The translations under genes were made by a program, and so were the position numbers. From positions 60,760,001 to 60,824,000 of the forward strand of contig NW_025963779.1 of assembly GCF_023055435.1 (NCBI RefSeq): a stretch of DNA of 64,000 nt. Direction: 5' to 3'. Of the stretch, positions 9,200 through 29,100 are shown one piece after another. Under the pieces are notes generated by a model. That model was not told the origin of the DNA and ran no database searches. It saw nothing but the letters and a program-made list of their open reading frames with translations. This stretch comes from Haliotis rufescens (lineage: Eukaryota). Within the stretch, counting starts at the first letter, position 1. Each line of letters begins with the position of its first letter.

Positions 9200-9833
9200 T
9201 TATCATTCCCTTTCTCTTATCCCATCCTTCCACCTACCTTTCCACTCTCATAGCCCATACTTCTATCTACCATTCCTTTTCTCATAGCCCATTCTTTCAC
9301 TTATCTTTACCTTTCCCTTTCCGATATCCCATACTTCCACCTACCTTTCCCTGTGTTATAGCCTATACATCCACCTACCTTAACCAGTCTCTTATCCCAT
9401 ACTTCCACCTACCTTTCCCTGTCTTAGAGCCCATACATCCACCTACCTTAACCTGTCTCTTATCCCATACTTCCACCTACCTTTCCCTGTCTTATAGCCT
9501 ATACATCCACCTACCTTAACCTGTCTCTTATCCCATACTTCCACCTACCATCCACTTCCTCTTATTCCATCCTTGCACCTATCTTCCCCTATCTCTTATT
9601 CCATCCTTCAATCAAGTTCGATCCCCGGCCGCGTCATACCAATAGACGTTAAAACGTGGCCCTTGTTGTTACCCTGCCTGGCGCTCGTCATTAAGGGGAT
9701 AAAACAAGGACTGGTCGGCTCGGAGTCAGTATACTGTATCTGATTTGTGTATTCATGTTAAATTGCAACATGGCATCTCAGTGGGCTAGCACTATGAAAT
9801 CGGCATTAGACCGGACTATTGCAAACAGCCACG

Positions 9834-9880
<47 letters not shown>

Positions 9881-10440
9881 GCAAATATTTGAACGTCGCT
9901 ATATAAGTTTTAAGTGCAAAAATATTAAACTCGACGTTAAACCCATCCTTCCATCTCCCTTCTCCTTTATCTTTTCCCATCCTTCCACCTGCCTTTCTCT
10001 TTATCTTATCCAATCATTTCACCTATCTTCCCCTTCATCTTATCCAATCCTTTCATCTACACTTCCCTCTTTCATATCCCATACTTCTACCTACATTTCA
10101 TTTTCTTTTATGTCATCCTTCAACCCCCATTTCTCTTACTCTTTTCCAATCCTTCCACTACCATTCCTTTTCTCATGTCCATACTTCCACCTACCTTCCC
10201 CTTTCTCTTTTCCCATCCTTCCACCTACCTTTCTCTTTATCTTATCCAATCATTTCACCTATCTTCCCCTTCATCTTATCCAATACTTTCACCTATCTTC
10301 CCCTTTATCTTATCCCATACTACCACCTACCTTTCCCTGTCTCTAATACCATCCTTCCAACTACCTTTCCCTTTCTATTTTCCCATTCTTCCACCTATCT
10401 TTCTTTTTCTCTTATCCACTCCTTCCAACCACATACCCGA
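9200..10440. repeat. Polypyrimidine minisatellite, ~32-bp unit
   Basis: TCTTATCCCATACTTCCACCTACCTTTCCCTG variants, split by a SINE C insertion. Confidence 0.9.
9612..9943 (+). mobile_element. SINE family C, 5'-truncated, with internal (CA)n
   Basis: Matches the 37700 copy from the B box onward; inserted into the pyrimidine minisatellite. Confidence 0.85.
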
Positions 10441-12869: not shown

Positions 12870-14200
12870 CTACAGCTGCTGCTATTGATGCTGCTGCCAC
12901 TGCTACTATTACTACTTCTACTGCTGCTGCAGTGTACACCTACTAGTTCCTGCCACTGCTACTAATTACTACTATTCCTGGTACTGCTACTACTAACACT
13001 ACTGTTGCTACCACTGCTAGCATTACTGCTACTGCTGCTACTATTACTACTTCTACTGCTGCTGCAGTGTACACCTACTAGTTCCTGCCACTGCTACTAA
13101 CTACTACTATTCCTGCTACTGCTACTACTAACACTACTGTTGCTACCACTGCTATCATTACTGCTACTGCTGCTACTATTACTACTTCTACTGCTGCTGC
13201 AGTGTACAACTACTACAGTTCCTGCTACCGCTACTAACTACTACTATTCCTGCTACTGCTACTACTAACACTACTGTTGCTACCACTGCTAGCATTACTG
13301 CTTCTTTCTGCTGCTACTATTACTACATTCTACTGCTGCTGCAGTGTACAACTACTACAGTTCCTGCTACCGCTACTAACTACTACTATTCCTGCTACTG
13401 CTACTACTAACACTACTGTTGCTACCACTGCTAGCATTACTGCTACTGCTGCTACTATTACTACTTCTACTGCTGCTGCAGTGTACACCTACTAGTTCCT
13501 GCCACTGCTACTAACTACTACTATTCCTGCTACTGCTACTACTAACACTACTGTTGCTACCACTGCTAGCATTACTGCTACTGCTGCTACTATTACTACT
13601 TCTACTGCTGCTGCAGTGTACACCTTCTACAGTTCCTGCCACTGCTACTAACTACTACTATTCCTGCTACTGCTACTACTAACACTACTGTTGCTACCAC
13701 TGCTAGCATTACTGCTTCTTTCTGCTGCTACTATTACTACTTCTACTGCTGCTGCAGTGTACAACTACTACAGTTCCTGCTACCGCTACTAACTACTACT
13801 ATTCCTGCTACTGCTACTACTAACACTACTGTTGCTACCACTGCTAGCATTACTGCTTCTTTCTGCTGCTACTATTACTACTTCTACTGCTGCTGCAGTG
13901 TACAACTACTACAGTTCCTGCCACTGCTACTAACTACTACTATTCCTGCTACTGCTACTACTAACACTACTGTTGCTACCACTGCTAGCATTACTGCTTC
14001 TTTCTGCTGCTACTATTACTACTTCTACTGCTGCTGCAGTGTACAACTACTGCAGTTCCTGCTACCGCTACTAACTACTACTATTCCTGCTACTGCTACC
14101 AATAGCACCACGGCTGCTACTATTACTACTACCATTGCTTCTAACTACTACTATTCCTGCTACTGCTGCTACTACTGCTATTACTACTAATATTGTTACA
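12870..14200. repeat. Tandem repeat, ~135-141-bp unit built from CTA/CTG triplets (~9 copies)
   Basis: Recurring anchor GCTGCAGTGTACA(C/A)CTACTA(C)AGTTCCTGC. Confidence 0.93.
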
Positions 14201-15761
14201 ACTACAACTACCCCTGTTATTGTGTGAAGTCCGAACACACCTTGTGAAAGGGAGGTAACTGCATCTAATGGTAACTACTTGCAGTTGTCAGCATGGTTAC
14301 GTGTTCGATAGTCAGCCTGAATCTGTTTGAATGTAACAATTAAAGCACTTCACAGACGTTGTTGTGAGTCCAATACAGATTGCAAATAATGAAAGATAAG
14401 CGAGCCTAGTTCAAGATCAGCATCATGAGTAAATCCTTGTATGTGAAAAACACTCTTCAAAAACTTTGAAATGAACAATCGACTGTTAAGTACATTTTGT
14501 TCAGTATCGTGAACGATTTTGTAAAATAATGTTCTAGTCAATAATAAATATAACCATCAACCTCATCCTTGCAATTTCATACGCATACACATACTACAAA
14601 CATTGTCGTGTCAGTACAAAAAAAGTGATTACAGTGGAACTGTGAAACGCCAGTAAAATATACGAATGCTTCCTTTATAATCAAGCATTAGGCGCCTGAC
14701 GGGTCTTTATTTATCGTGGGAGTGGATTTACGCCCAATTTAGAAATATTCCATCAATATCACGACAGACACAAAACATGGGCATCACACATCGTAGTCAC
14801 GTCATGCTTTAATTAATATACTACAAGGCTATCCAAGTGCGTACTCCTTATATTGCTGAAACATTAAGGATCCGACGTATAACTTCAACCTGCTCTATGT
14901 GTATTGACCACTCCATGTCAAGCGGGTTATACATGTATTCGAGTACTTATTGTTTCTGCAATGTGTTTCTCCGATGTTAAGGCAGAACGATATGTTTATT
15001 ACTATAGCTAGACGTACGTTGATTTTAATTTGTTGAGTCTCCAGGGTTAAAGTGTCAGGCATATCTCTTTGTTTTCTGGCAAAATACCTATCCATACCGA
15101 GATATACAGGACTTGAAGTTGTTCTTCCCATCGAGGCTATAAATCTACAATGGCATAATTTGGATGTATCAATCACTGGATTGTTTTGTCCAGACTCGAT
15201 TACTAGTACTTACAGGCCGTTGTCATACACCTGCCATATTGCGGAGTGCTGCGTTAAACAACAAACAAAAGGTTATGGATGTATTGAAATCGTATGTGGT
15301 GAATAATCGGCAAAAGATAACCAGATTCTATCCCCAGACAGAGGTAAACGTACTAACTGGGTACAAGGAAGTAATACACACACTTTAATAGTATCCATAC
15401 ATTCTGCACACTGCTCGAAAAACATCCGGGGATTCAACAGGCTGTTGGCAGCAAGGAGGTCATAAAAACATGTCAATAATTTTCATATTGAATGTTTCGT
15501 GCAGAAAACACATTATTTTTCTTAAGAAGGGTTCATGGGTGCACAATGTTTACGTTTGTCAAACACACACTCAAACAAGATGTATTTACCTTTTCGTTTA
15601 CTTTGAGAAAATGGTTCAATTTCTCTGTAAACACATACCTGTTTTAAAGATGGAAGTGACTGCTTTCAAAGTTCACCGTTTGCATCAAGACAGATTCACA
15701 GGAAATTTTGTTCAGTCTGACAAGTTTATTGCATCATAAGTACGAATAATTGCATGCCCAG

Positions 15762-17041: not shown

Positions 17042-18319
17042 TCATCCTTCTACACAAAAAGAAGTCCACAAACCAATGCGAACATGCAGCCTTACCGCTG
17101 GTGGGAGTAGATGTTTCAGCTGCAGGATGTCTTTGAGTTTCCCCGGTAGAGGCAGAAGATGTACAACACGATGAAGCTGAATGCCGAAAAGCCGTCGAAG
17201 CGTGAAACAAGACATGTCCTGTAGACTCCTAGGATTTGAGGTGACCATTCTCAGCTTACCCAGCATGTTTCGACCGTATGTGGTCTTCAGATAGGGATGG
17301 TCATCTTCCACCGTCACCACACTCTCCTTCAAGACCGGGAAGTACCCAGCCTTCAACAGACTGCCTGCAGCACCTGCCAGTTCTTCACTTTGAAGCGCCA
17401 AAGAATATGGAGTTTGGTTATTACTGTTCACCTTGTCTAATGCTACATTTAAACCAAAAGTCAAACACCTAACGGCCGGAGTATTCCCTAACACCAGATG
17501 GACAGGGGTGTTGCCATCGGAATCCTGGAGCTCTGGGTTAGCCCCATAAGACACAAGTAGCCTCACTGTGTCTAGGTAGGCTTTATTTTTCAGGCTGCCT
17601 TTTAAATTGCCTTTGATAAATGTTTTTGAGACTTCACAAATGCATATGATGTTTATGTCAGCTCCAGCTTCTAACAACACATGGCATGAACCTGCTTGAA
17701 GATTCATAGCAGCAAGTTGTAGAGGGGTGCTGCCTTCACTACACACCCCTTTGACATCACATCCTTCATCTATAAGAAGCTGGCACATGTCTGAATGTCC
17801 TTTCTTCGCTGCATCATGAAGAGGGAAAAAAACTTGATTCCCTCTGTTTAACATTGACAAGGATATGCCCTTCTGTCTTAAATACTTAACAACACACACT
17901 GAATTCCACTGTATTGCTGTTTTTAAAGGTGTGTTTCCGTTTCTATCTGGGCTCTTTAAACTTACATGATACCTGTCTACAAGAGTTCTAACCACATCTA
18001 GGTTATTACACTGACACGCTAGGTTTATAGGTGACACACCCAGCATTCCTCTCGGAGAGAACCCCTCCGATATCAAAGCAATCATCAGATCAACATTCCC
18101 TGTGATGCAAGCGGTCTCCACAGGCCCTATTCGGTACATCGGGAGTTGTTTATAAGACTTTTCTGAAATGCGACTGTCCTTGATATACGTTATAGTTGTG
18201 TCCACATCTCCTTCGTGTATAAAATTCGTCAAAGTCCTGAGATTGTATAGTGTGACCTCATTTCGCGCAAAGTAGTCTGTATGACGAAGACACTGACCCA
18301 TATTGACAAACGCGATCAT
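17042..18319 (-). CDS. Ankyrin repeat and SOCS box-containing protein (ASB-like), intronless, 425 aa
   Basis: Uninterrupted ORF with ~7 ankyrin repeats (SPINLAC, GNTPLKTAI, FPLHDAAKKGH, GSTPLQLAA, GNTPVHL, QTPYSLA) and a C-terminal SOCS box (PRSLQDMSCFTLRRLF...LPLPGKLKDIL). Confidence 0.93.
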   Translation of the reverse strand: MIAFVNMGQCLRHTDYFARNEVTLYNLRTLTNFIHEGDVDTTITYIKDSRISEKSYKQLPMYRIGPVETACITGNVDLMIALISEGFSPRGMLGVSPINLACQCNNLDVVRTLVDRYHVSLKSPDRNGNTPLKTAIQWNSVCVVKYLRQKGISLSMLNRGNQVFFPLHDAAKKGHSDMCQLLIDEGCDVKGVCSEGSTPLQLAAMNLQAGSCHVLLEAGADINIICICEVSKTFIKGNLKGSLKNKAYLDTVRLLVSYGANPELQDSDGNTPVHLVLGNTPAVRCLTFGLNVALDKVNSNNQTPYSLALQSEELAGAAGSLLKAGYFPVLKESVVTVEDDHPYLKTTYGRNMLGKLRMVTSNPRSLQDMSCFTLRRLFGIQLHRVVHLLPLPGKLKDILQLKHLLPPAVRLHVRIGLWTSFCVEG

Positions 18320-23158: not shown

Positions 23159-26100
23159 CTTTATACACAGAGATGTACATATATCACAGGGGTTCGTTTC
23201 CACATAGACAGTTAAAAAATATTACGTGCTTACGGACCGATTACTGTTATATTTAGCATGGCGAGAAAGAGTTGCCTGAGATGTATTTGCCAAGAAACCG
23301 TTACAAAAATGTTTGAAACTTTGCATCAGATGTTACATCCAAAAAAACATTTTTTCACATTGTGTCCTAAACAATTGCGTTGTTGGTCAAACAAAAACTG
23401 TTTGTCTTTTCAAGATAAAGTATGTCTTGGTAAAGTGACAGAATGTTAAATGGCTGGACCCCTCCTGTCATATATTTTGTTTTATTTTTTTGACGCACTC
23501 AGCAATATTCCAGCTATACGAAAGCAGTCTGTAAATAATCGAGACTGGACCTGAAAATGATTAACTTAATGAGCATCAAATCTATGCAATTGGGATACGA
23601 AGACATGACCTCAACTAAGTTAGCGAGCCTGTACATTGAGTCGCCTCTTACGACAAACATGGGTTCCAGAAGACCGATTCCGGATCTTCAAGAGGGTATA
23701 ATTACCACACAAAACAGTATTAATACTGTGCCAAATAACTAGAAGTGGCAGAACGATGTACATTGAGCTCCCATACACGGGTACCCTTGAAAACAACATG
23801 CAATACGCGATGTACGTACATCAACCAATGAATGAGAGACTATGTAAGGTTATCTTAACAGTATAGGACATGAAAATATAAGCCCTTGACACAGAAGCTG
23901 ATGAAATTTCTAAAAGGTTTATGGTTGAAATCTTTTTACCTGGGCCCACTTGCACAAACCGATCTTACATGTAGCCTTGCGAACATTGTAAGTTCATATT
24001 AGAATAGCAGACTTTACAACAGTTTTAGTGCTAAGAACGTTTTGTACAAGTGGGCCATGTATCTTTCATGCAGCCCTGACAATATTACGAATGTCTTATT
24101 CAAAATTATAGAATATGATACTCTTTAGGAAGTTGTGCAGGACTTGAAACTATTCTTCTGGTGTTCCTAGATACCTGAAAGTCCTACAGCAATGTTATGT
24201 CGGTATGTGTCCGGACTATAAATCTTAACTGTTTATTTCACTCTTATTGTACCGATACATTTGTATAATGTACTCACCCATAATGCAGACGGGAAACCAA
24301 CACATGAAGTCCGTCATTGCAACAAAGAACAGTTTCTTTGCAATTCTCAAATCTTGCTGCCGCCTTTCCTTTCCCTTCAGGAAAGACCCCTCTTTGATAG
24401 AACTATAGACGGTCCATTGACCGATAGCAATTAATACAAAAATGACAAAGTTGACCGCAATAAAGATTGATACAGAATACTCCCACCCAGCCAGTCTTTC
24501 CTTACTCAGAGGTAGGGCAAGACATGCCCCGTTCCTGCCATAGAAGTTCCAGCCTCTCAACGAAGGAAACAGTGGAATAACAGACAAGAAGATCGCTAAG
24601 ACCCAGGTACCGACTACTAGAATCCAAATACAAATTCTATTCAAGCGAACCTGGCGAAAGGGGAACTTAATGACCAAGAAGCGATCGAGCGTTATCAGAC
24701 AGACAAACACCACAGATGCTTCTGACGACAGTGTAGCCAGTACACCAGCTACCTTACACAGTGCAGAGTTTCGCCATTCATAGTCATTCCATACGTATAC
24801 ACCTCGATACCGAACATCTGCACCCGCTATGATCATCATGTACATGCCCATCAGTAGATCTGAGAAACCAAGATTGACAACAAAGAAATCACATCCATTG
24901 GTAGTTGACCTTCTGTTTACAACAATTCTATAAATGATGACGCAGACATTTCCCAACAAGGCTAGTATTCCTAGAATCCAAAGAAAGGCTCGAAGAATGT
25001 CTCGATGCATAAGGTCCTTACATGATGACAGAGAATTAACAGGTGCTTCACATTTGTTATCCTCTATTGTTGAAGGTCGAACTTTTGAGCAGCAAAGTAG
25101 GTAGTTATCTGTAGAAAGGTACGTTAATGAGTTCAACCCGCTGAACACCTGCTCACTAAATTGCACTACAGGATTACCAGAAAGATCCAGATCCATTAAA
25201 TATGTTAAGCCAGCAAAAGCGTTGTTTTCGATAAAGTCAATGACATTATCTCTCAAAAATAATTTTCTTAATGCTTTGGTGTACTTCAATGTCTTGTGTG
25301 TCAATTTCGCTATTCTACATTCCGAAATATCAAGGGAAACTAGACGGCCTAGTCCTTTGAAACCTTCAGGATTAATCCTATCAAATGTATTGCCGGATAT
25401 ATTTAGTTCTATTAGTTGCTCAAGCGATCGAAACACCCTCCCAGGTAACGATGCCAATATGTTATGACTGACATCAAGGTATAACAGATTGGTTAGTGTA
25501 CTGAATACGTCCGGAATAACTATCAAGCCACATTGTGACAAACAAAGCCTCATGAGAAAAGGCATTGTAGGGAAATCAGTTAGTTGTGGTATGTATACTC
25601 CAGTCATATCTAATTCTCGCGTGTGGTTATGAAGCGAAGTCATGTTGAAGTCATTCAACTTCACAGATGTTCCCTTGCACTCGGCCTTGGAGGGACATGT
25701 CATATGACAGTAACGTTCATCATCACCTAATGGACATTGGAAATTACCATCACAAATTTTATCTGGACTGAGACATACTTGTGACTGACTACATCTGAAG
25801 AAGAATGGACAAGAATATGCATCTGAAAAAAGACCGAAACGGTACTTAAGACATGTATCCTACTCTAAAAAGGCACCCGATTTTTTATGTGACGTTTGTT
25901 AAGCTGTTATGGCTAGCAAGTATTGTAACACATAGCCTTCCAATTGTGGATGTTCTTTATCCATTTTTTAAAAGTGTACTTGCAATTTCAACCTTCTCCA
26001 GAAAATTGTAACTTGACATTGGCAGTTATGCTATCATCAGATGGATATCGATTAGACAGATTAACATATACTAGTACTTAGTTTTTCTTTATTGCTAGTA

Positions 26101-29100
26101 AACGCACTTTTATGGTCAGTACACTTCAAAACATTATTTGTCAGTAGTAGATAATGTTTTAAACATACCACAGACGTGTTCATCTTCGCCTTCTTTACAG
26201 TCTCTTGTCCCATCGCAAACGTTCTCAGCAAATATGCATGCGCCATCACCACACTGAAACTCATCTACAAGACACTCCCGTTCATCTGAAACCAACATTA
26301 TACCAATAACGGAACGTTATAGTATACGTGTATTGCTAGAATAGGAATAGTTGTTCGGAGACGAGAACAGGGATAAAAGTGCATAAATGGTTCGGTGATA
26401 TCAATTATACTTTATGGATGATGAACATATTCACACTGCTATGCCGATAAGCCCATATTCATTGCACGTGTGTGGAGAAACTTAGCATTAACTGCTGATT
26501 AAAAGAAAGTATACACCCATGTTTGACGGTGGCTAAATATAATACGAACAAGACAAGACATGGTTATTCGATGGTGATGTATTTGATACGGGTATGATAT
26601 CCTTAAGTTAGCAGTGTTTCGGCAGACAACAGACAATTTGTACACTTACCACATGGCTCTATGGTAGATGGTGCAGAGAGGTATTTGCCGAAACCATCCG
26701 GAACTCTCTTGCAGTATTTCCTTGAGTCGTCAGCGGTGACTAAAGGAATGGTACAATAGTATTCGTGTACGACTTATGCATGTTAAATCATTTTAATTTT
26801 TAATTTGTAAAGCAAGATATCTCAAAAGACGAGTGTTTCTGTTCATCGCAATATTCAACACAAGTCTTCAAGTTACATGTAATGCTTGCCTGTTCAACGA
26901 TGTCTGTTATCAATCCATAAACAAATATATCAAGGAGGCATCTTCCCTTAACACCGGGAGGAAAACATTGTACAACAATCATATTTCGAATTTTGTGGTT
27001 ATAAGATGACATACACCACCAGTATATTGGGCTCGATCTTTTAAAATCGCAGATATGATGCCTCTTCGCTCCCAACTCATCCTCTTTATTGACGCCAGGA
27101 CAATCCACCATCCCATCCTTCACCCAGTGCATGGGCAGACACGTGCCATCATAGCACTGGAACTGCTGGCACAACCCTGTTGAAAACGTTTATTTGGGCA
27201 ATATAAATATAGTCTTTGAAAGGCATTTAGAAGTGATACACATGAGGAAGAGAATTTATGGATGTCAACGTCTTTATTATGAGGAACACAACGTTTCGGA
27301 GTATATGCTTACTCCCTCATCAGGTGAACCATTCACCCGATGAAGGAGTAAGCATATACTCCGAAACGTTGTGTTCCTCATAATAAAGACGTTGACATCC
27401 ATAATTTCTTCACCTGATGAGAGAGTAAGCATATACTTCGAAACGTTGTGTTCCTCATAATACAGAATTATATAAATTATCTTCCTAATACTCATATATA
27501 ATTATTCTTTCATAAACAATAAACTACATAAACATGCGATACTGCTGTGTTGGCAAAAATAGATGTCAGCTTTACGATTCACACAGTACAAGAATCAAGT
27601 TAAGAAAAGTACTGTTAAGCAACTCTTCAAAAAGGTAGGGGATACCCAGAAATAACTTAAACTTTCCAAAATTGTAAGCGATATTAGTTTTTCGTAATAG
27701 CTGTATGATAATAATAAACGATTTGGGAACACATTACAACCGGTAGTGAAGTATGACAGTAGATGTTATGACCGCCAACGACCTTGAAGGACGATCAATG
27801 GGAAATGTCACGTTTTAGAATCAGTATTGCGTAAGACCGCCCCGATTTGTCAAACATTCATTCACTCGACGAGGGATACTGCGTATGAATCTCCCAATGG
27901 CGATTTGAGGGAGTCTGTCCCACTCCTCTTGCAGCGCCTGGCCACGAGATCGGCTGCCTATGACGTTGACGCAAACGTCTCCTTATCATGTACCTAACGT
28001 GTACAATAGCTGCAATGTCTGGTCTCCTTGCTGGCCATGGCATTCTGTGGATGTTGTTCTGCTTCAGGTGAGCATTGACGATTTGTGCATGGTCAGCACG
28101 GGCGTTGTCGTCCTGAAAGACAAAACCTGCACCCACACGACTTGCAAGCGGGACAACAAAGAGTGTCAATATGTTGTCCCGATAGTACTGTCCACAATAC
28201 TTGCACAATATTGAGAGGGGTTCGGTCAGGCACAGTGATGCCATCTCACACCATAACTGATCCGGACGCAAAGCCAAATCTGTCATGAGGTCTCAGGTTT
28301 GCTTGACGTTCATTTCAACGTCAACGACCACGCCTATCAAGGATGTGCAAAGTTAATCAGGACGCATCTGAAAACGTGACACGTGACCAGCGACAATTAC
28401 CCTTGTTTCGACATTGTGTAGCAATATGACGATTTCTAAGGGCCGTTGAGCATGGAGATGAGCTGCATGTAGACGATTTCTAATCGTCTGACCCATATTT
28501 CGTACTCAAGTAGCCTGATGAAAGTTTACAACAAGTTGATTCTCCGTTTGCGTTCGATTTGGTAGAGCCTGGTTTCAAATCAATCGATCCTGTACTCTTG
28601 TCATTGACCTTGGACGCACTGAACGGAGTCGATCGACATGTTAGGTTTATTGGTACATGTTCCATAGTCTTCTAATCACAGACTGTAAAACATTGAACGT
28701 ATTGGCCAACTGACTTCTGACAGTTTCCTGCACACCAGTAGCCCGTAGACGCTCGTTGCATACGCCGCATCGCTTGTTCATACATTAACAATGAATGGAA
28801 TCTAGTAAATCACAACTGTATGATAAGCAGAATGAATAACACTGATAGAAATAATGGTCCACAGAGATCAATCGACCTTCCTTGAAAGTGTCAAAATCAG
28901 AAATGACACCCCTTGCGCGTGTGTGGCGCTGCTGCGTGAGACACGTACAAACTATAGGATGAATTTGATGTTAAGTTTTACAGACATAAACGATCTTGCA
29001 TGGAATGTTGGTCGTCAACACTTATCTTTGTTCCAATACTTGGTATTTACATTTCTATTTCATGATCCCCCTTTTTAGAGTATATATTTAGATAAAATAA

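What the first reader, a model, noticed from the sequence alone, without database searches (positions are those of the whole stretch)
27256..27462. Three minimal hammerhead ribozymes in a palindrome-plus-tandem cassette inside the GPCR intron
Seen: a 77-bp unit with CTGATGA-stem II-GAAAC-GTT and an AATAAA occurs once on minus and twice on plus. 27256-27328 and 27332-27404 form a 73-bp inverted repeat (2 mismatches, 3-nt spacer). Known: minimal type-I hammerheads with a palindromic, nearly absent stem III occur in pLTRs of Penelope-like elements, are proposed to cleave as dimers, and inverted/tandem pLTRs are typical of these elements. Inference: a tiny non-autonomous Penelope or retrozyme-like insertion. 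The intact copy is in the GPCR's sense orientation and could cut the pre-mRNA, but its adjacent antisense copy would sequester it in a long hairpin, a possible built-in off switch.
Basis: partly seen in the sequence, partly recalled or inferred. Interest (0 to 1): 0.8.

Follow-up and report, generated by a model that had tools for sequence, protein, structure and literature searches.

The report
Penelope-type mini-hammerhead insertion in a receptor intron
The three small hammerhead-ribozyme motifs are real, but they are the tail ends of a very abundant Penelope-type jumping element that landed head-to-head in an intron, which is ordinary repeat DNA and not a built-in switch for the receptor gene.

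Summary
Observation confirmed. Window 27212-~27491 holds three copies of one repeat: A on the minus strand, B and C on the plus strand. A and B form a near-perfect palindrome; B and C lie in tandem 77 nt apart.

- **Cores:** A and C have a complete hammerhead core (CUGAUGA, helix II, GAAA, CG, UU). B has C instead of U at core position 4, and C also has a weakened helix II.
- **Family:** this genome has 1584 matches to CTGATGA-N19-GAAACGTT, against 2 for the reversed control.
- **Architecture:** it matches the minimal hammerhead of metazoan Penelope-like elements (PLEs). There is an extra base after A9, a G10.1-C11.1 pair, a 6-bp helix II with compensatory changes between subfamilies, and a palindromic ACGU with no loop 3.
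- **Insertion signs:** copies show PLE hallmarks. There are two alternative 3' ends about 33 nt apart (the optional "tail"), variable 5' truncation, 21 head-to-head junctions and a few tandem junctions.
- **Partner:** no RT/GIY-YIG partner was found in the DNA I could fetch.
- **Gene context:** the host receptor gene is on the minus strand. RNA contigs show normal splicing of the downstream exons and use of the exon edge 33 nt from the insert.
- **Sense copy:** copy A has no partner on its strand and sits in a roughly 80-bp hairpin, so the "off switch" idea is unsupported.

The scan already holds 74 hammerhead notes on other DNA of this genome.

The parts
27212..27328 (-). Copy A. It is sense to the receptor gene and 5'-truncated at the TTCACC border of helix I. 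It carries a complete hammerhead core, an AATAAA (27278-27273) and the full long 3' tail ending ...CAAAGAC at 27212.
   Evidence: BLAST to a full-length family copy gives 93% identity over 117 nt. Many RNA contigs from other copies diverge from the window at 27211/27212.
27290..27323 (-). Hammerhead core of copy A: CUGAUGA, G, GGAGUA, AGCAUA, UACUCC, GAAA, CG, UU. The predicted cut is 3' of 27290 on the minus strand.
   Evidence: Exact pattern match. The helix II hairpin is predicted in the isolated unit, and the AACGUU helix between two units.
27329..27331 (.). Head-to-head junction (CCA). Positions 27330-27331 (CA) already match the element sequence just upstream of TTCACC, so only one base is unassigned.
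   Evidence: The same junction type occurs at 21 loci genome-wide.
27330..27408 (+). Copy B. It is antisense to the gene, has its core at 27337-27370 with C at core position 4 (CCGAUGA), and an AATAAA at 27382-27387. It ends at the short 3' end and joins directly to copy C.
   Evidence: The C4 variant makes up about 12% of family copies.
27409..27491 (+). Copy C. It is antisense to the gene and has an intact core at 27414-27447, with the predicted cut after 27447. The base of helix II is weakened (A.C mismatch plus G.U, or a register shift with a bulged G). AATAAA has become AATACA. The 3' part has decayed, the short end lies near 27491, and a possible decayed tail runs to about 27518.
27241..27419 (.). 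Inverted repeat formed by copy A and copy B (88-nt arms). On either strand it folds into a hairpin of roughly 80 bp.
   Evidence: Minimum free energy is -149.3 kcal/mol (minus strand) and -146.2 kcal/mol (plus strand) for 27205-27475. The below-threshold Rfam microRNA matches are explained by this hairpin.
27015..27178 (-). Context: the LDL-receptor class A exon of the VWA-VWA-LDLa-LRR-7TM receptor gene. Its 3' splice site (cag|G) lies 33 nt from the end of copy A's tail.
   Evidence: Pfam match to Ldl_recept_a. Spliced contigs in two runs end this exon exactly at 27178 and join 27015 to 26739 with GT..AG on the minus strand.

Best explanation
The cassette is insertion debris from a high-copy, non-coding retroelement family whose 3' module carries a Penelope-like minimal hammerhead.

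**The element (shown).** Each full copy is about 320 nt. It has a head of about 200 nt, then TTCACC, the hammerhead and AATAAA. It ends either at a short 3' end (...CCTTATG) or about 30 nt further on (...CAAAGAC).

**How the cassette arose (inferred).** A Penelope-like reverse transcriptase/endonuclease supplied in trans copied the element's RNA from its 3' end. Such enzymes nick and extend both DNA strands, so two cDNAs can be laid down tail-outwards. They meet head-to-head close to the 5' border of the hammerhead, giving copy A against copy B. A further template jump, or a later insertion that homed onto the existing copies, added copy C in tandem.

**Role of the hammerhead (inferred).** It is built to work only as a dimer, through the palindromic AACGUU. 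Its likely role lies in the life cycle of the element's own RNA, not in the host gene.

**At this locus (inferred).** The sense copy A is alone on its strand and locked in a hairpin of roughly 80 bp. Copy B has a mutated core. The only plausible active pair is C's core acting on B's cut site, and that lies on the strand antisense to the gene. The cassette therefore most likely does nothing for the receptor.
For: **Core and architecture.** Copies A and C match CTGATGA-N19-CGAAACGTT exactly. The genome holds 1584 such matches against 2 in the control, and 560 exact 34-mers. The family has the four traits listed for metazoan PLE minimal hammerheads in PMC4209133:
- a base between A9 and 10.1;
- a G10.1-C11.1 pair;
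- a palindromic 15.2-16.2 with no loop 3;
- subfamilies with compensatory changes. Pair 6/15 is U-A in the main family and C-G in the 34-copy AAGAAGUA-loop subfamily. Pair 4/17 is seen as A-U, G.U and G-C.

**CUGAUGA is not a by-product of CpG decay.** CCAATGA occurs only 12 times against 1584.

**PLE insertion signature.**
- Of 20 dispersed loci, about 6 end at the short 3' end and about 14 at the end roughly 30 nt further on.
- RNA contigs from other copies leave the window at 27245 and at 27211/12.
- This matches the optional 30-40 bp tail between two RT start sites, described as unique to PLEs (PMC11167929).
- 5' truncation is variable, with a shared 5' start in 2-3 copies.
- There are 21 head-to-head junctions against 0 in the control, and tandem junctions at 5 loci.
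- The flank is AT-rich.
- The anole PLE protein extends both DNA strands.

**Folding.** Cofolding two A units predicts the two helix II hairpins plus an intermolecular AACGUU helix. The whole cassette folds as one long hairpin.

**Host gene.** Splicing of the downstream exons and use of the adjacent exon edge are seen in contigs from two species.
Against: - No RT/GIY-YIG ORF lies next to any copy in the roughly 215 kb of family loci I hold.
- None of the 44 GIY-YIG hits lies within 10 kb of a listed hammerhead hit on the same contig. Mobilisation by a PLE is therefore inferred from the signatures and is not shown.
- Rfam hammerhead models do not score the motifs at all.
- Helix I is only 3 bp (GUG/CAC).
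- No cleavage data exist. Contigs cannot show RNA ends, and the small-RNA reads came from another species and did not map.
- A and C share a G at the bulge position that B lacks, and B has C4. A single-event origin from one template is therefore uncertain.
Confidence: 0.85

Rival explanations
1. A working cis-regulatory device. Sense copy A cleaves the receptor pre-mRNA, and the pairing between A and antisense B acts as an off switch. Alternatively, the long intronic hairpin 33 nt from the 3' splice site tunes splicing or yields small RNAs.
For: Copy A has an intact core in the sense orientation. The hairpin is very stable. The insert ends 33 nt from the acceptor site.
Against: - Monomeric minimal hammerheads show no detectable cleavage (PMC4209133).
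- There is no second sense copy in 64 kb.
- The same palindromic junction occurs at 21 loci, so it is a mechanical product of insertion.
- The exon edge next to the insert is used in contigs of two species.
- Small-RNA reads gave nothing, though they came from another species and are no real test.
Confidence: 0.04
2. A miniature retrozyme. The 77-83 nt tandem unit is transcribed, self-cleaved at both hammerheads and circularised, and it spreads through tiny circular RNAs.
For: Tandem arrays of the unit exist with periods of 67-83 nt. The array on contig C1 near 5.87 Mb has intact cores in every unit. The family is abundant in RNA-derived contigs.
Against: - Most copies are solitary, and full-length ones are about 320 nt with defined 3' ends.
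- Strict tandem junctions occur at only 5 loci.
- The two large arrays have dead cores. On contig C101, GAAACGTT has become ACAATGAT. On contig C24, the cut-site GTT has become GGG or TTT. They therefore grew as DNA satellites.
- Known animal retrozymes have canonical hammerheads and 150-450 nt units (PMC7229834).
- In the window only two units are in tandem, and one has a mutated core.
Confidence: 0.07
3. Not a ribozyme at all: a chance hammerhead-like string inside a satellite, a foldback element or a MITE.
For: Rfam hammerhead models give no hit. Helix I is very short. A lineage with C at core position 4 has also amplified.
Against: - All 15 core and cut-site bases are present, in 1584 copies against 2 in the control.
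- Subfamilies carry compensatory changes in helix II.
- The unscripted PLE traits are all present: the extra base, G10.1-C11.1 and palindromic ACGU.
- Solitary copies have no terminal inverted repeats and are 5'-truncated like retroelements.
Confidence: 0.03

Closest known systems
Minimal hammerheads (min-HHR) in the pLTRs of metazoan Penelope-like elements (Cervera & De la Pena 2014, PMC4209133)
   Same: - Type I layout with no loop 3 and a palindromic 15.2-16.2.
- An extra base between A9 and G10.1, and a G10.1-C11.1 pair.
- A long helix II (6 bp) and a short helix I.
- Thousands of mostly solitary copies per genome, with some pairs on opposite strands.
- Consensus families with covariation.
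   Different: No copy in hand flanks an RT/GIY-YIG ORF. Here the motif sits in the 3' module of a non-coding element of about 320 nt. A sublineage with C at core position 4 has amplified.
Poseidon PLE of the green anole (PAc), characterised in vitro (PMC11167929)
   Same: - The hammerhead lies a short distance upstream of two alternative RT start sites. These produce an optional tail of about 30-40 bp at the 3' end of genomic copies.
- Both DNA strands are cut and extended.
- Targets are AT-rich.
- Hammerhead catalysis is not needed for insertion in vitro, which fits the amplified C4 lineage here.
   Different: PAc is autonomous and its hammerhead overlaps the ORF start. Here there is no ORF, the cut site lies about 49 nt from the short end and about 80 nt from the long end, and nothing has been tested biochemically.
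Non-LTR retrozymes of animals (Cervera & De la Pena 2020, PMC7229834; proposed PLE derivatives in bioRxiv 10.64898/2026.07.22.740005)
   Same: Non-autonomous, hammerhead-bearing and sometimes tandem. The preprint (abstract read only) proposes they derive from PLE pLTRs.
   Different: Retrozymes carry canonical type I hammerheads in 150-450 nt tandem units and are seen as circular RNAs. This family has the minimal variant, is mostly solitary, has 67-83 nt array units, and its large arrays are catalytically dead.
Sm-alpha SINE-like hammerhead repeats of Schistosoma (Ferbeyre et al. 1998, cited in PMC4209133; details from my own knowledge)
   Same: A short (about 0.3 kb), very abundant non-coding retroposon carrying a type I hammerhead.
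   Different: Sm-alpha has a canonical hammerhead and a tRNA-like head. ARAGORN found no tRNA-like head in the loci here.

Membership tests
Hammerhead ribozyme (catalytic motif) | Conserved core C3 U4 G5 A6 N7 G8 A9 ... G12 A13 A14 A15.1 ... U16.1 H17 | tested here: met
   Copies A (27323-27290, minus) and C (27414-27447, plus) have every core base. Copy B fails, with C at position 4.
Hammerhead ribozyme (catalytic motif) | Helix II closed by G10.1-C11.1 and supported by covariation | tested here: met
   GGAGUA/UACUCC forms 6 bp in copies A and B. Across subfamilies pair 6/15 changes from U-A to C-G, and pair 4/17 is seen as A-U, G.U and G-C. Copy C is weakened at the base of the helix.
Hammerhead ribozyme (catalytic motif) | Helices I and III that close the three-way junction | tested here: inconclusive
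   Helix I is only GUG/CAC (3 bp). Helix III cannot form within one unit. Cofolding two units predicts an intermolecular AACGUU/AACGUU helix.
Hammerhead ribozyme (catalytic motif) | Match to the curated Rfam hammerhead covariance models | tested here: not met
   No hammerhead family appears at E <= 10 in 26000-29000. This is expected for a motif without helix III, and the authors of the minimal motif used their own descriptor.
Hammerhead ribozyme (catalytic motif) | Site-specific self-cleavage after H17 | not testable with these tools
   Contigs cannot show RNA ends. The only raw reads were small-RNA libraries of another species and did not map.
Metazoan PLE minimal hammerhead (PMC4209133) | A base between positions 9 and 10.1, G10.1-C11.1, palindromic 15.2-16.2 with no loop 3, and large consensus families per genome | tested here: met
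   The motif reads CUGAUGA, A/G, G...C, GAAA, CG, UU. The genome has 1584 copies with U4 and 293 with another base at position 4.
Metazoan PLE minimal hammerhead (PMC4209133) | At least some copies lie in the flanking repeats of an RT + GIY-YIG ORF | tested here: inconclusive
   No such ORF lies in the 50 loci held. GIY-YIG hits exist in the genome (44 of them), but none is near a listed motif.
PLE-mobilised insertion (PMC11167929) | Optional 30-40 bp 3' tail, meaning two alternative 3' ends | tested here: met
   About 6 copies end at the short end and about 14 at the end roughly 30 nt further on. Contig break points lie at 27245 and 27211/12.
PLE-mobilised insertion (PMC11167929) | Tandem or partial-tandem and inverted organisation, with 5' truncation | tested here: met
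   There are 21 head-to-head junctions against 0 in the control, tandem junctions at 5 loci, and variable 5' ends.
Non-LTR retrozyme (PMC7229834) | Canonical type I hammerhead in 150-450 nt tandem repeats | tested here: not met
   The hammerhead is the minimal variant. Array periods are 67-83 nt, most copies are solitary, and the large arrays have dead cores.
Non-LTR retrozyme (PMC7229834) | Monomer-length linear and circular RNAs | not testable with these tools
   Only assembled contigs were available for the source species.

The most novel reading that the evidence does not exclude
The sense copy A is not inert. The family is abundant in RNA-derived contigs, so a family RNA could pair with A in trans through the palindromic AACGUU and cut the receptor pre-mRNA 33+ nt upstream of the LDLa exon. 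The hairpin between A and antisense B would compete with that pairing. Alternatively, the hairpin of roughly 80 bp next to the 3' splice site could itself feed editing or small-RNA pathways or modulate splicing. Either way a transposon ribozyme would have been recruited to regulate a host receptor.
Probability: 0.04. Interest if true: 0.65.

Novelty: new member of a known kind. Interest (0 to 1): 0.2.

Why it matters
For the receptor gene it probably does not matter. The motifs belong to a repeat family with about 1,900 copies, and the locus looks like an ordinary intronic insertion.

As a family it is a clean example of the minimal Penelope-type hammerhead, with two modest points of interest.
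- The ribozyme sits in a non-coding element of about 320 nt that shows the PLE tail signature. This adds to the view that short hammerhead repeats in animals depend on PLEs.
- A lineage with C at core position 4 has amplified to about 12% of copies. This natural observation fits the in-vitro report that hammerhead catalysis is not required for PLE insertion.

Tried and rejected
- **Rfam scan of 26000-29000 at E <= 10.** It gave no hammerhead hit. It did give three microRNA-precursor matches (mir-606, MIR6425, mir-6095), all far below their gathering scores. I reject these as artefacts of a long perfect hairpin.
- **CpG-decay origin of CUGAUGA.** If CTGATGA came from a CCGATGA master by CpG decay, CCAATGA should be about as common. 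It occurs 12 times against 1584. Rejected.
- **tRNA-like (SINE) head.** Other notes of the scan suggested one. ARAGORN found no tRNA-like sequence beside any of the 20 dispersed copies or anywhere in the window. The tRNA-like string upstream of the L046 copy belongs to a different, adjacent repeat.
- **Autonomous partner.**
  - There are no RT/EN ORFs in the 50 loci held.
I did not try to get round that limit.
  - Comparing coordinates gave nothing closer than 11 kb.
- **Retrozyme reading of the arrays.** The 73-nt array on contig C101 and the 78-nt array on contig C24 have dead cores.
- **Small-RNA raw reads.** 0 and 4 reads mapped, and the runs are from another species, so this is no test.
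- **Target-site duplication.** None could be called in the AT-rich flanks.
- **Long degenerate pattern.** I used shorter patterns instead.
Full report
**What is in the sequence**

The region reads as three copies of one unit.
- Copy A lies on the minus strand (27328 down to 27212).
- Copy B lies on the plus strand (27330-27408).
- Copy C lies on the plus strand (27409 to about 27491).

A and B form an inverted repeat with 88-nt arms, 92% complementarity and a 3-nt spacer. B and C are direct repeats 77 nt apart.

The strict motif CTGATGA-N19-CGAAACGTT occurs only at A (27323-27290, minus) and C (27414-27447, plus). It occurred in none of 100 shuffles of the window.

B reads CCGATGA, which puts C at core position 4. 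C has AATACA in place of AATAAA and two changes at the base of helix II. The observation therefore stands, with these corrections and somewhat wider borders.

**It is a large family**

- A DNA search of the window's own genome (1.33 Gb) gave 1291 first-look candidates. They were solitary copies, inverted pairs and tandem arrays.
- The exact 34-mer CYGATGAAGGAGTAAGYATATACTCCGAAACGTT occurs 560 times, against 0 for the reversed control.
- With helix II left free, CTGATGA-N19-GAAACGTT occurs 1584 times, against 2.
- The same pattern with A, C or G at position 4 occurs 293 times. About 77% of these have C.

A rival origin would be a CCGATGA master that decayed at its CpG to give CTGATGA. That predicts about as many CCAATGA copies, but there are only 12. 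The canonical core is therefore the master state.

**The architecture is that of the Penelope-type minimal hammerhead**

The family motif is CUGAUGA, A, GGAGUA, AGCAUA, UACUCC, GAAA, CG, UU, then GUG.

Cervera and De la Pena (PMC4209133) defined the metazoan PLE minimal hammerhead. They listed four traits that emerged without being built into their search descriptor:
- consensus families with covariation;
- a base between positions 9 and 10.1;
- a conserved G10.1-C11.1 pair;
- palindromic 15.2-16.2 positions.

They also described a long helix II, a short helix I, mostly solitary copies, and pairs on opposite strands.

All of these hold here.
- The extra base is A in the family and in copy B, and G in copies A and C.
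- Helix II is 6 bp and is closed by G-C.
- ACGU is palindromic and there is no loop 3.
- Helix I is only GUG/CAC.

Covariation is visible between subfamilies. A 34-copy subfamily with loop AAGAAGUA has C-G where the main family has U-A (pair 6/15). Three of its copies revert to U-A. Pair 4/17 is seen as A-U, G.U and G-C, and once as U-A.

Cofolding two A units predicts both helix II hairpins and an intermolecular AACGUU helix. That is the dimeric helix III the model requires.

Rfam's hammerhead models do not score these motifs. This is expected for a motif with no helix III of its own, but I record it as a failed membership test.

**The unit is the 3' module of a short retroelement with PLE insertion signatures**

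I aligned 20 dispersed copies with their flanks. Homology continues about 200 nt upstream of TTCACC. Two or three copies share a 5' start, and the others are truncated at various points.

Downstream, the copies stop at one of two places. About 6 stop at ...CCTTATG and about 14 stop roughly 30 nt further on, at ...CAAAGAC.

RNA contigs show the same two ends independently. Contigs from other copies leave the window at 27245 and at 27211/12 in both runs (table 7).

An optional 30-40 bp tail, lying between two internal RT start sites, is described as a signature shared by and unique to PLEs (PMC11167929). In that anole element the hammerhead also lies shortly upstream of those start sites. Its protein cuts and extends both DNA strands, its targets are AT-rich, and hammerhead mutants still insert.

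Extension from both strands gives a simple route to tail-outward, head-to-head copies. The exact junction type seen here (CATCRGGTGAA, 0-10 nt, TTCACCYGATG) occurs at 21 loci, against 0 for the control. Direct short-end-to-TTCACC tandem junctions occur at 5 loci, including this one.

**What is missing is the partner**

- No RT or GIY-YIG ORF lies in the roughly 215 kb of family loci I hold.
- The genome has 44 GIY-YIG matches.
- Mobilisation by a PLE is therefore inferred and not shown.
- ARAGORN found no tRNA-like head beside any copy.

**Tandem arrays are not evidence for a working retrozyme**

- The 73-nt array on contig C101 has GAAACGTT replaced by ACAATGAT in nearly every unit.
- The 78-nt array on contig C24 has the cut-site GTT replaced by GGG or TTT.

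These arrays grew as DNA satellites. Only small arrays, such as the 83-nt one on contig C1 near 5.87 Mb, keep intact cores.

Known animal retrozymes have canonical hammerheads in 150-450 nt units and give circular RNAs (PMC7229834). A 2026 preprint argues that they derive from PLE pLTRs (abstract only).

**Gene context**

Pfam places VWA, VWA, LDLa and LRR-7tm_1 ORFs on the minus strand.

Contigs from two runs, apparently transcriptomes of two species, show these features:
- exons at 26169-26285, 26650-26739 and 27015-27178;
- GT..AG introns on the minus strand;
- contigs that leave the genome exactly at 27178 and carry further sequence that does not lie on 27179-28300.

I take this to mean the LDLa exon is spliced to an exon further upstream. 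The joint itself was outside the stretch I laid.

The cassette is thus intronic and copy A is sense to the gene. A's tail ends 33 nt from the cag|G acceptor site.

On the sense strand, 27205-27475 folds into one hairpin of roughly 80 bp, with a minimum free energy of -149 kcal/mol.

**Does it act on the host?**

- A single minimal hammerhead showed no detectable cleavage, and dimers cleaved only weakly. The anole hammerhead needed its own protein.
- Copy A has no sense-strand partner in the window.
- On the antisense strand, C's intact core could in principle act on B's cut site after 27370. B's own core is mutated.
- The palindrome is a recurrent product of insertion.

I therefore see no support for a built-in off switch. 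It is not excluded, and I give it about 4%.

**Origin of the three copies**

A and B share GACG in the tail region. A and C share G at the bulge position. B alone has C4 and A at the bulge, which are both states common elsewhere in the family.

Six of the 21 palindromic junctions are mixed T/C at position 4. Independent draws at a 12% frequency would predict about four. One event from a single template is therefore not assured. A template switch or a second, homing insertion would fit as well.

**Verdict**

This is a real member of a known kind, and not a special device. The scan holds 74 hammerhead notes in this genome. One earlier follow-up on another locus reached a similar reading. I treat that as a lead only and not as evidence.

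Noticed in passing
genome-wide; in the window copy B, 27337-27370: A sublineage with C at hammerhead core position 4 (CCGAUGA) makes up about 12% of family copies. It includes many near-identical full-length copies and its own sub-variant (helix II GGGGUG...UACACC, at least 9 copies). A and G at this position are each about 1-2%. The lineage seems to have amplified with a core that should be crippled. This fits the in-vitro finding that PLE insertion does not need hammerhead catalysis.
   Followed up: partly
L047 (G000:C2:24718025-24718113): In one head-to-head pair the inverted copy starts exactly at the predicted cleavage product (GUGUUCC...). That is what a cDNA copied from a self-cleaved RNA would look like. 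It is a single case and could be chance.
   Followed up: no
family loci L032, L033, L035, L048 and window 27328-27332: Inverted and tandem copies are nearly always truncated within a few bases of TTCACC, the 5' border of helix I. This is not the ribozyme cut site. Why cDNA synthesis or template switching ends there is unexplained.
   Followed up: partly
window 27179-27212: The sense-oriented insert, which carries an AATAAA, ends only 33 nt upstream of the 3' splice site of the LDLa exon. The branch-point region is therefore at or next to the element's tail, yet the exon edge is used in RNA contigs.
   Followed up: partly
window 25844-25980 and 26392-26665: Two other intronic stretches of the receptor gene have very high summed contig depth (about 300 and about 1000-1400). 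This points to other abundant repeat families.
   Followed up: no
window 9206-10427 and 12900-14211: C-rich, strand-biased minisatellites with 34-nt units, and with 141/414-nt units built from CTA/CTG triplets. They account for the strongly negative GC skew at 8-14 kb.
   Followed up: partly
window 17042-18319 (minus): An uninterrupted 425-aa ORF with ankyrin repeats and a C-terminal SOCS box, which looks like an ASB-type gene.
   Followed up: no
L045 oriented copy, about 200 nt upstream of TTCACC: The head of the element of about 320 nt contains roughly three repeats of a 50-nt unit, each ending in GTTGGCTTCC and containing ATCAGCGC. It has no tRNA-like fold.
   Followed up: no
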